DNA of 64,000 nt, from positions 124,001-188,000 of IMG/VR virus record IMGVR_UViG_3300021137_000001; one strand, written 5' to 3'. The translations under genes were made by a program, and so were the position numbers. Below, in pieces: positions 23,309 to 27,856 of this stretch; position 1 is the stretch's first letter, and every line of letters starts with the position of its first letter. The notes under the pieces were generated by a model. The model was not told where the DNA came from and ran no database searches. It worked only from the letters and a program-made list of their open reading frames with translations.

Positions 23309-23440
23309 ATGAAAAGAAAGAAATTAATAAGAAAAATGTATCTAGCATGTGTGCGTAAGAATACAAAGAAACAAAAGAAACTATGGCTTAAAGCATTAAA
23401 GCTAAGTTTGAAACACAAACACACTGAAGTAATTCAGTAA
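23309..23440 (+). CDS. Small highly basic protein (43 aa) immediately upstream of tmRNA
   Basis: AAGGA RBS; MKRKKLIRKMYLACVRK... Confidence 0.6.
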   Translation: MKRKKLIRKMYLACVRKNTKKQKKLWLKALKLSLKHKHTEVIQ

Positions 23441-23447
23441 AAGAAAT

Positions 23448-23783
23448 TGTTGTATAACTCTCAAAGTAAGGATTGCAAGACGCGGGGGCAGAACCCGCCA
23501 TCTCCACCAAAGATATATTAAGCAATATTGGCAAGAAACGCCATAAGTTCGGTAGTATATCTTTGATGGGGATGACTTAGATTCGATTGCGATAGATAGG
23601 ATAAAGGGCAACACGTGGGGTCACGTTAAATGCAAAAACCGTAAATGCAGAAAAAGCAAATACAACTGGTGCAGTAAAAGTATCTATGGGTCGTGGCTTC
23701 CGCTTCGGTTCACGTACTGATGCTGCTGTTTTAGCTTAGTCTAAAACAACCGGGGTAGGACTTACCTGGCAACAGAAACAACC
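23448..23783 (+). ncRNA. ssrA: Circularly permuted two-piece tmRNA (outer ends approximate)
   Basis: T-arm plus CATCTCCACCA ending 23509; hairpin spacer; GGGGATG 5' end at 23568 (G3-U70 pair); tag ORF 23647-23739; terminator follows. Confidence 0.92.
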
Positions 23784-23808
23784 AAAAAGCCCCGCAAGGG
23801 GCTTTTTT
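23784..23808 (+). terminator. Rho-independent terminator of tmRNA
   Basis: AAAAAGCCCC-GCAA-GGGGCTTTTTT. Confidence 0.9.
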
Positions 23809-23832
23809 ACGACAACGCAAATAAATACTATT

Positions 23833-24234
23833 ATGGGAAGACCAAAACTAATAGAAACAGAAGAAGAACGCAGACTACGATTACGAGCTGCTTATAACCG
23901 ATGGATAGCAAAACCTGGTAATAAGGAAAAGAAATATAAATCGGATAAGAAATATTCAGCAGACGCACATAAGCGTTGGCGTCAAGCAAATAAGCATAAG
24001 ACACGATTAAAAAGTGCCAACGAACGAGCCGCAAGATTACAGAGAATCCCACCGTGGGCAGATAAAGAAGCGGTTAAAGAGTTTTATCTAAGCTGCCCTG
24101 CAGGATATCATGTTGATCATATAATTCCGTTGCGTGGTAAAATAGTAAGCGGACTACATATAGTAGAGAATATGCAATATCTTATAGCTGAAGTAAATTT
24201 AAGTAAAAGTAACAAATATGTGATATCCGCCTAA
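23833..24234 (+). CDS. HNH endonuclease
   Basis: HVDHIIPL.GK.VSGLH..EN.Q.L....N.SKSNK. Confidence 0.9.
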   Translation: MGRPKLIETEEERRLRLRAAYNRWIAKPGNKEKKYKSDKKYSADAHKRWRQANKHKTRLKSANERAARLQRIPPWADKEAVKEFYLSCPAGYHVDHIIPLRGKIVSGLHIVENMQYLIAEVNLSKSNKYVISA

Positions 24235-24310
24235 GAAACTGCTTCGTCCGGGGTAGCTATACCTTGTTACCAAAACTAGTAGAAAGCTCACTTCGGTGGG
24301 CTTTCTTTTT
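24229..24310 (+). repeat. Diverged second copy of the tmRNA 3' end plus terminator
   Basis: CCGGGGTAG....TACCT.G..AC..AAAC matches 23750-23779 and is followed by a TTCG-loop terminator at 24281-24310. Confidence 0.7.
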
Positions 24311-24312
24311 GG

Positions 24313-24341
24313 TTGACATTTTAGTAAATCGAGCGTATAAT
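24313..24341 (+). promoter_or_regulatory. Sigma70-type promoter
   Basis: TTGACA-N17-TATAAT. Confidence 0.88.
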
Positions 24342-24418: not shown

Positions 24419-25408
24419 ATGAGTAAATCTGAAGATTTAAAAATGCAACCTTTTGATCCTAGTCAAGGACGCAAAGACAAGAAAGTGTCTTTGATTCAAG
24501 TTGGACGAATGGTCCAAAAACGAGTCGGCACTATTGCAACAAACCCAAGTTTCCCATACCAAGATATATTAAAGTTTGCATGGGTGCCTGCTGAATTAGT
24601 TTATTTTAATTATGAGCGCCAACGTTGGCCTGAGCCAAAACACCAAAAGAAACTACGTGGTAAGTGGAATATTCATTGCGTAACTCCGCTTCAATGCCGT
24701 TATAGTCCTAGCGAAAATCGTTACTATGGTGCAGATGGTCAACAACACTCCACTGAGTGGATTGCGCAGTATGGAGAGCAAAGCATGGTTCCTGTATTCT
24801 ATGTTGAGAGTGAGGACGAAAATGTAGAATCGATTATGTTATTGGCACTTAATAATGATAATGAGCCGATGGCAAAATATTTTATTCACCAACAAGAAGT
24901 TATCATGGGTGAGAAAGATGCTGTTGCCCTTGAAAATTGTGTTATCGATGCTGGTTGTACTACCGGCTACAAAAAACGTACAGCAGGAGTTATTACTCAC
25001 ATCAGTGATTTAACCATGGCCCGGGATCAGTTTGGGTTAGGTGCGCTAGGACAAATTTTAAGTAAAATGCGTACATATTGGCCGACTGAAAAAATCGCCA
25101 CAGCAACTATGCTAGGCTTCCTTAAAGTTCGTGAACTTATGATATCTGCTGAATTATATACAGATGACTTATTTGAAGATGTTGTATATCAAAATTCAAA
25201 TTTCTTTGAGAGTAGTGATAGACTTCACGGCGACATTAAGGATCAATTTGAATATGAGTACCCAACAAACTACAAGGGTATGGGTGTTCGTGAAAAAATT
25301 GCAAGCGGTATCATTGATGCGTATGAATATAAGACTGGTAAAACATTAGTTGCCAAACCATTTAGCATTACGATGCCAGTAATCGATGATGAACTAAAGG
25401 CGGCATAA
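24419..25408 (+). CDS. ParB/Srx-fold protein (DUF262/DndB/DUF6551-like)
   Basis: YERQR and DGQQH motifs; later LNN. Confidence 0.65.
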   Translation: MSKSEDLKMQPFDPSQGRKDKKVSLIQVGRMVQKRVGTIATNPSFPYQDILKFAWVPAELVYFNYERQRWPEPKHQKKLRGKWNIHCVTPLQCRYSPSENRYYGADGQQHSTEWIAQYGEQSMVPVFYVESEDENVESIMLLALNNDNEPMAKYFIHQQEVIMGEKDAVALENCVIDAGCTTGYKKRTAGVITHISDLTMARDQFGLGALGQILSKMRTYWPTEKIATATMLGFLKVRELMISAELYTDDLFEDVVYQNSNFFESSDRLHGDIKDQFEYEYPTNYKGMGVREKIASGIIDAYEYKTGKTLVAKPFSITMPVIDDELKAA

Positions 25409-25851
25409 TGGCAAAATTATATAATAAATATGACCCCGGCACATATCATAGCCGTACCCTTTATCGTATAGTTTGCAATACCAATGACTTACGTCCTGTT
25501 TGGGCATATAAAAATGCCAACAAATGGGGTGTAGAAAACGAACCGTTTTTAAAACTATGCGGCGAAATGTGCTCGTGTTGTGGAAGTACTTTAAACTATG
25601 GATTAGGTAAAAACAACATAGAAGATAAACTTGATATTAACACTCCTAGCACCGATCATATTGTGTCGCAGGACGAAGCTAAAAAGTTGGGTTGGTCTAA
25701 GGAACAAATACATGACATAAGCAATCTTTGGATTATATGTATGCGATGCAATTTGTTGAAAAATAATTCAACCGCAGAAGATATACATCGTTACAAGGCA
25801 ATTGTGGAAGTATTAGAACGTACTAAATTAAACAGTATATTAATTGAATAA
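25408..25851 (+). CDS. HNH nuclease translationally coupled to the ParB-like gene
   Basis: CSCCG...STDHIV...NLWIICMRCN..K; TAATG overlap. Confidence 0.85.
   Translation: MAKLYNKYDPGTYHSRTLYRIVCNTNDLRPVWAYKNANKWGVENEPFLKLCGEMCSCCGSTLNYGLGKNNIEDKLDINTPSTDHIVSQDEAKKLGWSKEQIHDISNLWIICMRCNLLKNNSTAEDIHRYKAIVEVLERTKLNSILIE

Positions 25852-25965: not shown

Positions 25966-27856
<1,891 letters not shown>

What the first reader, a model, noticed from the sequence alone, without database searches (positions are those of the whole stretch)
23734..24310. HNH gene flanked by two versions of the tmRNA 3' end, and ending on a tag-like stop
Seen upstream of the HNH: GCT TAG...CCGGGGTAGGACTTACCTGGCAACAGAAAC + terminator. 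Seen downstream: GCC TAA...CCGGGGTAGCTATACCTTGTTACCAAAAC + a second terminator. The HNH ORF ends ...ISA* on that GCC TAA. Inference: the HNH element invaded the end of the tag ORF, brought a replacement tmRNA 3' end and terminator, and reuses the displaced tag's last codon and stop. This is the same end-replacement strategy as at the dehydrogenase, applied to an RNA gene, and it could swap tag C-termini between phages.
Basis: partly seen in the sequence, partly recalled or inferred. Interest (0 to 1): 0.7.

Follow-up and report, generated by a model that had tools for sequence, protein, structure and literature searches.

The report
Homing nuclease replaced phage tmRNA end
A 329-kb freshwater jumbo phage carries its own two-piece tmRNA gene, and a selfish HNH nuclease gene sits just after it between a working tmRNA 3' end of one type and a pushed-aside 3' end of another type. 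This shows how such nucleases can swap parts of an RNA gene between phages.

Summary
Window 23404-23813 is an intact circularly permuted (two-piece) tmRNA gene (Rfam 91.6 and 71.4 bits; ARAGORN misses it). Its tag ends ...DAAVLA*. An alphaproteobacterial-type pseudoknot ("end A") and a terminator follow.

The HNH ORF (23833-24234) comes next. Its last codon and stop (GCC TAA) begin a second tmRNA 3' end ("end B", betaproteobacterial type, 24229-24311).

- **End B is native elsewhere.** It is 90-95% identical to the functional ends of HNH-free relatives (L122, L106, L112/L116, L113, L117), where it directly follows the tag.
- **End A is also native elsewhere.** Other HNH-free relatives (L125, L009) carry only end A. 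The window's tag and end A are 92-100% identical to L125, against about 72% in flanking genes.
- **The HNH clade tracks tmRNA genes.** In six other phage lineages it abuts the 3' end of a permuted tmRNA gene; a seventh (L029) is cut at its contig end.
- **There is a second case.** L028 has its own displaced remnant of a third end type.

Best explanation: a free-standing homing endonuclease converted a B-type tmRNA gene to the donor's A-type end and left the old end behind. The same architecture is known from endonuclease "gene hybrids" in fungal mitochondria, but here it affects an RNA gene. Nuclease activity and cut site are inferred, not shown.

The parts
23404..23509 (+). tmRNA acceptor-piece part of the permuted gene. 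P2 3' strand from about 23448; T arm GCGGG-GGCAGAA-CCCGC at 23482-23498; acceptor 3' strand CATCTCC at 23499-23505; ACCA at 23506-23509.
   Evidence: Rfam RF04321 (23448-23679, 91.6 bits) and RF01849 (23404-23786, 71.4 bits); structural scan. The T loop is alphaproteobacterial in type, and ARAGORN finds nothing.
23510..23567 (+). Intervening segment between the two tmRNA pieces, presumably removed on processing.
   Evidence: Insert region in the Rfam alignments. It is not conserved among relatives (24-46% identity).
23568..23646 (+). Start of the tmRNA coding piece: acceptor 5' strand GGGGATG (G3-U70 pair with 23499-23505), P2 5' strand and the PK1 region.
   Evidence: 86% identical to L125 and L112.
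23647..23739 (+). Tag reading frame: resume codon GCA, 30 aa AEKANTTGAVKVSMGRGFRFGSRTDAAVLA, stop TAG at 23737-23739.
   Evidence: Read and aligned with relatives; 96-100% identical to L125.
23728..23813 (+). End A, the functional 3' domain. Stop-codon hairpin 23728-23747; pseudoknot region with loop GGCAACAGAAA 23750-23786; terminator hairpin with T-run 23789-23808; then ACGAC, also present in L125.
   Evidence: Matches the 3' end of RF01849. Identical or near-identical in HNH-free L125/L128/L130, and 86-89% identical in L009. Hairpin listed.
23814..24228 (+). DNA specific to the HNH element: a 19-nt leader with an ATAAATA motif, and the HNH ORF from ATG 23833 up to its penultimate codon.
   Evidence: Absent from both A-type (L125, L009) and B-type (L122 and others) relatives. 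Leader motif shared with L028, L029, L031 and L032.
23833..24234 (+). HNH endonuclease ORF, 133 aa. Motif GYHVDHIIPL...VSGLH...N.QYL...N; ends ...YVISA* on the displaced tag's GCC TAA.
   Evidence: PHROG 1035 'endonuclease VII' at 2e-10. Pfam HNH only weak, and not for the window's own ORF. The nuclease domain is found in 117 cultured-phage records.
24229..24311 (+). End B, the displaced remnant of a B-type tmRNA 3' end. Last tag codon and stop 24229-24234; 3' half of the stop-codon hairpin; intact H-type pseudoknot (S1 24250-24255 with 24260-24265; S2 24256-24259 with 24277-24280); terminator 24281-24306 with T-run.
   Evidence: Local match to the RF01850 3' end. 90-95% identical to the native ends of L106, L112, L113, L117 and L122. 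Pseudoknot covariation; terminator.
24313..24341 (+). Sigma-70-type promoter (TTGACA, 17 nt spacer, TATAAT) of the downstream gene 24419-25408.
   Evidence: 12 of 12 consensus match. The same arrangement follows the tmRNA terminator in L122 and L009.

Best explanation
The phage encodes an intact two-piece (circularly permuted) tmRNA. Directly after its terminator sits a free-standing HNH homing endonuclease gene. This gene belongs to a clade that has specialised on the 3' flank of phage tmRNA genes.

Inferred sequence of events:
1. During a co-infection, the nuclease from an HNH-bearing phage with an A-type tmRNA 3' domain cut or nicked a B-type tmRNA gene at or just upstream of the end of its tag reading frame.
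2. The break was repaired by copying from the donor, starting from homology in the tmRNA body. Copying ran through the donor's tag, end A, terminator and HNH gene.
3. The copied strand was joined back illegitimately inside the last codons of the HNH ORF, to the recipient's broken end.

The result is [tmRNA body and donor tag, end A, terminator A] - [HNH] - [last tag codon, stop, pseudoknot B, terminator B] - promoter of the next gene.

End A is the one used by the tmRNA, because transcripts stop at terminator A. End B now supplies only the last codon, the stop codon and the transcription terminator of the HNH gene.

Shown here: the anatomy, the two allele families, the HNH-tmRNA association, and a second independent displaced end. 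Inferred: nuclease activity, cut site, repair pathway, and which lineage was the recipient.
For: 1. The tmRNA is complete: RF04321 at 91.6 bits and RF01849 full length at 71.4 bits, with an acceptor stem carrying G3-U70 and a T arm.
2. B-type HNH-free relatives have the tag followed directly by an end that is 90-95% identical to window 24229-24309. L122, the closest relative by GroEL DNA (81%), continues at 92% identity into the promoter, to 24350.
3. The window's tag, stop hairpin and pseudoknot A are 96%, 100% and 92% identical to L125, but only 25-58% identical to B alleles over the tag end, stop hairpin and pseudoknot. L125's flanking genes are only 72-73% identical. This is a conversion-tract signature.
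4. The nearest HNH homologues (45-68% identity) in L027, L028, L030, L031 and L032 lie immediately downstream of permuted tmRNA genes, and L039's lies convergently against a tmRNA 3' end. L029 is cut 51 nt upstream of its HNH but keeps a terminator and leader like L028's. These are different phages with different tmRNA types. They cluster in the tree: clades at 99/93 and 99/97, and 2 label changes against 7.7 expected by shuffling.
5. The distribution is patchy. Of the 39 fetched loci that carry an A-, B- or C-type end motif with at least 500 nt downstream, only L136 (the same contig as L028) holds the HNH; there the motif is the displaced remnant. The other 38 are HNH-free tmRNA loci.
6. Second independent case: in L028 the HNH is followed by the 3' part of a third end type and its terminator. 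That type is native directly after tags in the other 18 loci that carry the motif, and here the junction lies inside the pseudoknot.
7. The wider nuclease family sits beside DNA polymerase, tgt/DpdA and helicase genes in cultured phages, and some copies are annotated as homing endonuclease or endonuclease VII.
8. An L009-like A allele co-occurs with the window phage in the same lake metagenomes (loose ends in runs X6 and X9).
9. The same architecture, made by mobile endonuclease ORFs, is documented for fungal mitochondrial genes (PMC3630166).
Against: - HNH-free relatives with only end A exist (L125, L009). L009 also shares the downstream gene order (p24419, second HNH-like gene, GroEL). So the window's ancestor could have been A-type and received [HNH and end-B remnant] ready-made from elsewhere.
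- No HNH-free sibling of this exact strain was found.
- The nuclease assignment rests on a motif, PHROG hits and weak Pfam hits. The window's own ORF has no Pfam HNH hit at E <= 1. The AlphaFold model has pLDDT below 50 over most of residues 95-133, the C-terminal half of the nuclease motif.
- Four of the seven HNH loci with readable flanks (six others plus the window) show no displaced remnant, so the remnant is not a regular part of the element.
- High identity of RNA segments can partly reflect functional constraint rather than recent transfer.
Confidence: 0.7

Rival explanations
1. The composite [end A - HNH - end-B remnant] arose in another phage. It later entered an A-type ancestor of this phage (L009- or L125-like) as a ready-made block by ordinary homologous recombination or homing. 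On this reading end A is native here, and the HNH plus the end-B remnant is the insertion. The founding mechanism is the same; only the recipient lineage differs.
For: L009 shares an alpha-type T arm (84% identity), end A and the downstream gene order with the window. Relative to L125, the foreign DNA starts only after terminator A plus ACGAC, at 23814. The promoter region is a mosaic, L122-like up to about the -10 box and L009-like afterwards.
Against: It still needs the same founding event, so it explains nothing extra. By GroEL DNA the closest relative is the B-type L122 (81%, against 72-74% for the A-type relatives).
Confidence: 0.25
2. The mosaic comes from illegitimate or homologous recombination between co-infecting phages that had nothing to do with the HNH protein. 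The HNH gene is only a passenger at a recombination hotspot, and may be inactive.
For: The locus is highly mosaic even without the HNH: T arm, tag and end types assort independently among HNH-free relatives. Nuclease activity is untested, and sequence and fold support is modest.
Against: Both displaced-end cases found (window and L028) have the HNH exactly at the junction. None of the 38 HNH-free tmRNA loci examined had been retrieved by two end motifs at once, though this is not a dedicated search for tandem or displaced ends. The HNH clade keeps 35 invariant residues, including the catalytic-type motif. It tracks tmRNA 3' ends across unrelated tmRNA types and in both orientations.
Confidence: 0.12
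3. An in-situ tandem duplication of the tmRNA 3' end was followed by divergence, with the HNH later inserted between the copies.
For: Both copies share the same layout: stop codon, 10-13 nt, CCGGGGTAG, pseudoknot, terminator.
Against: Each copy is 90-100% identical to a different allele family in other phages, but they are only about 55% identical to each other over the pseudoknot region and 25-32% over the tag end and stop hairpin. No HNH-free relative was seen with tandem ends.
Confidence: 0.02
4. The arrangement is an assembly chimera of two co-occurring phage strains.
For: Related phages with other alleles are present in the same samples.
Against: Four independent IMG/VR assemblies are identical. 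Logan contigs from other runs bridge both junctions without differences.
Confidence: 0.01

Closest known systems
Mobile endonuclease ORF (mORF) 'gene hybrids' in fungal mitochondria: Allomyces macrogynus atp6; Glomus atp6, atp9, cox2 and nad3 (PMC3630166, which cites Paquin et al. 1994)
   Same: The layout is identical: gene core, inserted foreign 3' end, endonuclease ORF, displaced native 3' end. The two ends resemble different lineages. The endonuclease ORF can be in phase with neighbouring gene fragments.
   Different: Those hosts are protein-coding organelle genes, and the endonucleases are GIY-YIG or LAGLIDADG. Here the host is a structured RNA gene (tmRNA) in a phage and the nuclease is of HNH type. 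What is swapped is a tag C-terminus plus a pseudoknot and terminator, not a protein C-terminus.
Free-standing homing endonucleases of T4-like phages, notably SegB in the tRNA gene cluster (PMC2330249) and the HNH-family MobE (PMC2790892); nuclease genes at boundaries of genetic exchange between phages (PMC10448857)
   Same: A free-standing nuclease gene lies beside conserved genes, including RNA genes. Its distribution among relatives is patchy. Flanking markers are co-converted, and recombination boundaries fall at the nuclease gene.
   Different: No displaced duplicate gene end is described for SegB or MobE. The target here is a tmRNA gene, and activity is untested. The protein is not detectably related to SegB, which is GIY-YIG.
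Integrase-mediated genomic islands and prophages in tRNA and tmRNA genes (Islander, PMC4383910)
   Same: The element restores the 3' end of the split RNA gene and leaves a displaced 3' fragment at its far border.
   Different: Those elements use tyrosine integrases and att sites, the fragments are usually near-identical, and the elements span kilobases. Here there is no integrase, the insert is 415 bp, and the two ends belong to different allele types.
Group I introns with LAGLIDADG homing endonuclease genes in the T loop of bacterial tmRNA genes (PMC11915505)
   Same: A homing endonuclease gene is associated with a tmRNA gene.
   Different: Those are intron-borne and sit inside the T loop of standard one-piece genes. 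Function is kept by splicing, not by end replacement.
Phage-encoded two-piece tmRNAs, for example OM43 phage Melnitz and pelagimyophages (PMC9004378); 79 phage tmRNAs in the tmRNA database (PMC11915505)
   Same: A permuted tmRNA gene in aquatic phages, with an alphaproteobacterial-type 3' domain.
   Different: In the papers I searched, no nuclease association or alternative 3' ends were reported for them.

Membership tests
Circularly permuted (two-piece) tmRNA | Covariance-model match above the curated threshold | tested here: met
   RF04321 at 91.6 bits (cut-off 47); RF01849 at 71.4 bits (cut-off 50), model positions 1-355.
Circularly permuted (two-piece) tmRNA | tRNA-like domain in permuted order: T arm and acceptor 3' strand with CCA upstream of the acceptor 5' strand, with a G3-U70 alanine identity pair | tested here: met
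   T arm 23482-23498; CATCTCC-ACCA 23499-23509; GGGGATG 23568-23574; 7 of 7 pairs, with G-U at position 3.
Circularly permuted (two-piece) tmRNA | Tag reading frame starting at a resume codon and ending in a hydrophobic, Ala-rich degron | tested here: met
   GCA at 23647 to TAG at 23737-23739; 30 aa ending DAAVLA. Homologous tags in 7 relatives.
Circularly permuted (two-piece) tmRNA | Processing into two base-paired RNAs, and trans-translation activity with SmpB | not testable with these tools
   No RNA data. The phage genome has no SmpB, so host SmpB would be needed.
HNH (His-Me finger) endonuclease | HNH catalytic motif (His ... Asn ... Asn/His) conserved | tested here: met
   GYHVDHIIPL, H109, N113 and N122 are invariant in 7 homologues.
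HNH (His-Me finger) endonuclease | Profile match to a curated HNH family above threshold | tested here: not met
   Pfam HNH PF01844 matches 6 of 7 clade members, but the best E-value is 0.017. The window's own ORF has no HNH hit at E <= 1. PHROG 1035 'endonuclease VII' at 2e-10 and phrog_26577 at 1.6e-14 are uncurated support.
HNH (His-Me finger) endonuclease | Beta-beta-alpha metal-finger fold | tested here: inconclusive
   In the AlphaFold2 model, pLDDT is below 50 for residues 95-114 and 118-133. No fold search was run on it.
Free-standing homing endonuclease gene | Sporadic presence at one homologous site among related genomes | tested here: met
   Present here and in L028 (same contig as L136). 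Absent from the 38 other tmRNA loci examined that have at least 500 nt downstream.
Free-standing homing endonuclease gene | Consistent linkage to one conserved target gene across lineages | tested here: met
   L027, L028, L030, L031, L032 and L039 all abut the 3' end of a permuted tmRNA gene. L029 is cut at its contig end but keeps an L028-like terminator and leader.
Free-standing homing endonuclease gene | Co-conversion tract of donor-like flanking sequence | tested here: inconclusive
   The tag and end A are 92-100% identical to L125, against 72-73% in flanking genes. RNA constraint may inflate this, and no donor was identified.
Free-standing homing endonuclease gene | Site-specific cleavage of the nuclease-free allele, with an immune allele in the carrier | not testable with these tools
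   Needs biochemistry. The two junction positions (window 24229; inside the pseudoknot in L028) only place the cut at or 5' of the tag stop codon, and that is an inference.
mORF-type end-replacement gene hybrid | Order: gene core, inserted 3' end, endonuclease ORF, displaced 3' end | tested here: met
   A second example is in L028.
mORF-type end-replacement gene hybrid | The two ends trace to different lineages, with the displaced end matching close relatives | tested here: met
   End B is 90-95% identical to the B-type relatives, including L122, the closest by GroEL. End A is 92-100% identical to the more distant L125.

The most novel reading that the evidence does not exclude
A clade of HNH homing endonucleases has specialised on phage-encoded two-piece tmRNA genes. 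It drives modular replacement of their 3' domain (tag degron end, stop-codon hairpin, pseudoknot, terminator) among co-infecting jumbo phages. The end type (alpha-like A, beta-like B, or C) acts as the sensitivity or immunity determinant. On this reading, selfish nucleases rather than host ancestry explain why closely related phages carry chimeric alpha/beta-type tmRNAs with different degradation tags.
Probability: 0.35. Interest if true: 0.72.

Novelty: new variant of a known kind. Interest (0 to 1): 0.62.

Why it matters
**First such case for an RNA gene, as far as I found.** End replacement by a mobile endonuclease gene is documented for mitochondrial protein genes. In five full-text searches I found no report of it for an RNA gene, for tmRNA, or in phages.

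**An explanation for a tmRNA puzzle.** Phage tmRNAs are often used to infer host ancestry, for example alpha-type against beta-type. Here one phage clade mixes alpha-like and beta-like T arms, tags and pseudoknots. If nuclease-driven conversion moves these modules, host inference from phage tmRNA is unsafe. The proteolysis tag a phage adds to stalled proteins could also change in a single recombination event.

**A practical handle.** The finding provides a small (133 aa) candidate site-specific nuclease with a predicted natural target region, which is easy to test.

**An annotation gap.** ARAGORN misses this tmRNA entirely.

Tried and rejected
- **ARAGORN** on the window found no tmRNA or tRNA; the gene was found only with Rfam models.
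- **BLASTN of the locus against cultured phages** gave only short HNH hits, so relatives had to come from IMG/VR.
This was overturned when the B-type motif search found B-type HNH-free relatives.
- **Structure prediction of the HNH** from a 7-sequence alignment gave pLDDT below 50 over most of residues 95-133, so no fold search was run.
- **Profile search of the PDB** gave only a 17-residue match to Cas8f-HNH fusions at E = 0.39.
- **Laying Logan contigs of four partial-holder runs** showed no joint that skips the HNH. The contigs are short and coverage is low, so absence is weak evidence.
- **A metagenome scan for the window-specific promoter**, run to find an HNH-free sibling, returned only the window's own contig.
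- **A T4-late-like ATAAATA motif** lies before the HNH start. Genome-wide counts are only modestly strand-biased, so I make no promoter claim.
- **The two founding two-piece tmRNA papers** (PMC16621, PMC516066) are not held. The pseudoknot assignment therefore rests on my own covariation count.
- **No paralogue of this HNH** exists elsewhere in the genome.
Full report
**Context.** The window is bases 124001-188000 of a 329,321-bp IMG/VR virus record with direct terminal repeats. GC content is about 37%. The record encodes a GroEL, a DNA ligase and tail-fibre-like proteins, so it is a jumbo phage. Public runs that hold the sequence are freshwater and lake-sediment metagenomes.

**Checking the observation.**
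- The upstream copy has GCT TAG at 23734-23739, the CCGGGG...CAACAGAAAC motif at 23750-23779, and a GC hairpin with a T-run at 23789-23808.
- The HNH ORF runs 23833-24234 and ends ...YVISA*.
- Its last codon GCC and stop TAA (24229-24234) are followed by the CCGGGG...TTACCAAAAC motif at 24248-24276 and a strong terminator at 24281-24306.
- CCGGGGTAG occurs nowhere else in the 329-kb genome.
- Three other IMG/VR contigs are identical over the region. Logan contigs from other runs bridge both junctions without a difference. The arrangement is therefore real DNA.

**What the upstream gene is.** ARAGORN reports nothing. Rfam finds a circularly permuted tmRNA: RF04321 at 23448-23679 (91.6 bits) and RF01849 alpha_tmRNA at 23404-23786 (71.4 bits, full model length).
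- The T arm (23482-23498), the acceptor 3' strand and ACCA (23499-23509) lie upstream.
- A 58-nt spacer follows.
- The coding piece then starts with GGGGATG (23568), which pairs 7 of 7 with the upstream strand, with G3-U70.
- The tag frame runs from GCA 23647 to TAG 23739 and encodes 30 residues ending DAAVLA.
- The model alignment shows that "end A" corresponds to the conserved 3' domain of alphaproteobacterial two-piece tmRNAs (ACCUGGCAACAGAAAC).
- The phage has no SmpB gene.

**What the downstream copy is.** With relaxed thresholds, 24070-24306 aligns to the 3' end of RF01850 beta_tmRNA (27 bits, local E = 2e-6). The match includes the tag end CCGCCUAA and CCUUGUUACCAAA.
- A pattern scan found the same motif in 19 other viral contigs, always right after a tag reading frame and before a terminator. 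Rfam confirms full permuted tmRNA genes there, for example L122, L112, L113 and L109 above the RF01850 cut-off.
- On 16 such ends (12 distinct), an H-type pseudoknot is fully supported. All 120 cells are paired, three pairs show compensatory changes, and no register shift comes close. The pseudoknot has stem 1 GGGGUA/UACCUU, stem 2 GCUA/UAGU and loop GUUACCAAAA.
- The window's copy keeps all ten pairs.
- End B is therefore a genuine, intact tmRNA 3' domain. It lacks only the 5' half of its stop-codon hairpin and everything upstream.

**Relatives with and without the HNH.** The phage clade shares GroEL and other neighbouring genes. It contains two kinds of HNH-free tmRNA locus.
- *B-type* (L122, L106, L112/L116, L113, L117): the tag ends ...TEA(L/V)AA*, and GCC TAA is followed directly by a sequence 90-95% identical to window 24229-24309. 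In L122, window positions 23724 and 24229 are 6 nt apart, and identity (92%) continues through the terminator into the promoter, to 24350.
- *A-type* (L125 = L128 = L130, and L009): the tag is followed by end A, a terminator and then a promoter, with nothing resembling end B.

The stated refutation condition is met only by part of the relatives.

**Segment-wise identities.** The window is a mosaic.
- Against L125: tag 96%, tag end plus stop hairpin 100%, pseudoknot 92%.
- Against B alleles over the same three segments: 76-82%, 25-32% and 53-58%.
- L125's protein-coding flanks are only 72-73% identical, and GroEL DNA is closest to the B-type L122 (81%).
- The T arm is alpha-like and closest to L009 (84%).
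- The DNA found in neither allele type is 23814-24228. It comprises a 19-nt leader and the HNH ORF without its last codon and stop.

**The HNH gene.** The protein has the motif GYHVDHIIPL...VSGLH...N.QYL...N, invariant in seven homologues. Other support is uneven.
- PHROG hits are 'endonuclease VII' at 2e-10 and an unnamed family at 1.6e-14.
- Pfam HNH matches are weak: 6 of 7 clade members, best E = 0.017, and none for the window's own ORF.
- The predicted structure was unreliable in the nuclease part.
- The C-terminal 85 residues recur in 117 cultured-phage records beside DNA polymerase, tgt/DpdA or helicase genes. A few copies are annotated as homing endonuclease, HNH or endonuclease VII. 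That is the usual picture for free-standing homing endonuclease genes.

**The HNH clade is tied to tmRNA genes.** Full-length relatives occur only in viral contigs. The closest ones sit at the 3' end of a permuted tmRNA gene.
- L027, L028, L030, L031 and L032 have the HNH downstream on the same strand.
- L039 has it convergent, with its stop codon against the tmRNA 3' end.
- L029 is cut by the contig end but retains the terminator and leader.
- Their tmRNAs are of different types, with both alpha and beta models scoring.
- In a maximum-likelihood tree of 65 homologues, the tmRNA-linked genes form supported clades (99/93 and 99/97). The label needs 2 changes, against 7.7 for shuffled labels.
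- Conversely, of the 39 fetched loci that carry an A-, B- or C-type end motif with at least 500 nt downstream, only L136 (the same contig as L028) has the gene.

**A second displaced end.** In L028, the functional tmRNA end and terminator are followed by the HNH. Immediately after its stop come CCTCGTAACAGAAATCACC and another terminator. That 19-mer is the 3' part of a third end type (C). It follows tags directly in the other 18 loci that carry the motif. The junction there lies inside the pseudoknot, about 34 nt further 3' than in the window. Two independent events with different allele pairs and different junctions argue for illegitimate joining at a broken recipient end, not for a fixed cargo. 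L027, L030, L031 and L032 show no remnant, as expected when both flanks are homologous.

**Mechanism.** I conclude that this is a free-standing homing endonuclease gene specialised on the 3' flank of phage tmRNA genes. The window records an end replacement.
1. A B-type gene was broken at or 5' of the tag stop.
2. It was repaired from an A-type, HNH-bearing donor using homology in the tmRNA body.
3. The copied strand was rejoined inside the last codons of the HNH ORF.

Terminator A ends the tmRNA transcript, so end A is the functional one. End B now provides the HNH gene's last codon, stop and terminator. Related phages with other alleles co-occur in the same samples, which gives the opportunity for co-infection.

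Three things remain unshown: nuclease activity, the cut site, and whether the founding event happened in this lineage or the composite was imported into an A-type ancestor. The L009 gene order fits the second possibility.

**Comparison with known systems.**
- The architecture equals the mobile-endonuclease 'gene hybrids' of fungal mitochondria, where a foreign C-terminus and an endonuclease ORF displace the native C-terminus (Allomyces atp6; Glomus atp6, atp9, cox2, nad3; PMC3630166).
- In mode of spread it resembles T4 free-standing endonucleases such as SegB in the tRNA cluster (PMC2330249) and MobE (PMC2790892). It also fits the finding that nuclease genes mark exchange boundaries between phages (PMC10448857).
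- It mimics the restored-end and displaced-fragment signature of integrase islands in tmRNA genes (PMC4383910), but has no integrase.
- Homing endonucleases known in tmRNA genes are intron-borne LAGLIDADG genes in the T loop (PMC11915505).
- Two-piece tmRNAs are known in aquatic phages (PMC9004378).
- Five full-text searches found no report of a free-standing nuclease tied to tmRNA genes, or of end replacement in an RNA gene.

I therefore rate this a new variant of a known kind.

**Verdict.** Interest is 0.62.

Noticed in passing
window 23482-23498: ARAGORN misses this tmRNA entirely. Its T loop is GGCAGAA, the alphaproteobacterial type, not the usual TTCGA type. Close relatives (L122, L125) have a standard GGTTCGATTCC T arm on an otherwise homologous gene, so T arm, tag and 3' end assort independently in this phage clade.
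   Followed up: partly
window 25408-25851: A second HNH-like ORF (147 aa; PHROG HNH/endonuclease VII hits). It lies just downstream of gene 24419-25408 in every relative whose locus reaches far enough (directly abutting it in most, about 580 bp further on in L009), at 60-84% identity. Unlike the tmRNA-linked HNH, it looks fixed rather than mobile.
   Followed up: partly
window 23750-23786 and 24248-24280, against 23448-23454 and 23609-23616: The loop of pseudoknot A (GGCAACAG) repeats the P2 strand of the coding piece (GGCAACAC). The loop of pseudoknot B (CUUGUUAC) resembles the opposite P2 strand of the acceptor piece (UUGUUGUA). Each loop could therefore compete for P2 pairing. No function is known to me.
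   Followed up: no
L125:11310-11335; window 23803-23813: HNH-free L125 shares TTTTTTACGAC after its (different) terminator with the window. ACGAC also resembles the start of the HNH leader in L028 and L029 (AAACGA.GATAAATA). It may be a footprint of a lost HNH, or part of the insertion site.
   Followed up: no
L029:439-500: After the HNH stop in L029 there is a small hairpin, GTTG-CCTAAAAA-CAAC, with a stop codon in its loop, followed by a terminator. It looks like a tmRNA stop-codon hairpin without a pseudoknot, and may be a third displaced tag end.
   Followed up: no
window 23814-23832; L028, L029, L031, L032 upstream of the HNH start: A conserved ATAAATA (TATAAATA in L032) lies 5-10 nt before the HNH start codon and recalls T4-type late promoters. 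Genome-wide, ATAAATAC occurs 26 times on the plus strand and 3 times on the minus strand.
   Followed up: partly
window 26246-27856: A phage-encoded GroEL (PHROG 5725, E = 5e-169) is conserved in all relatives. It served here as the yardstick for relatedness.
   Followed up: partly
runs X6 and X9 at window 23725-23780: Contigs from the same lake samples carry an L009-like tmRNA allele, and a further A-type variant with another terminator. Several tmRNA alleles of this phage clade therefore coexist in one community.
   Followed up: partly
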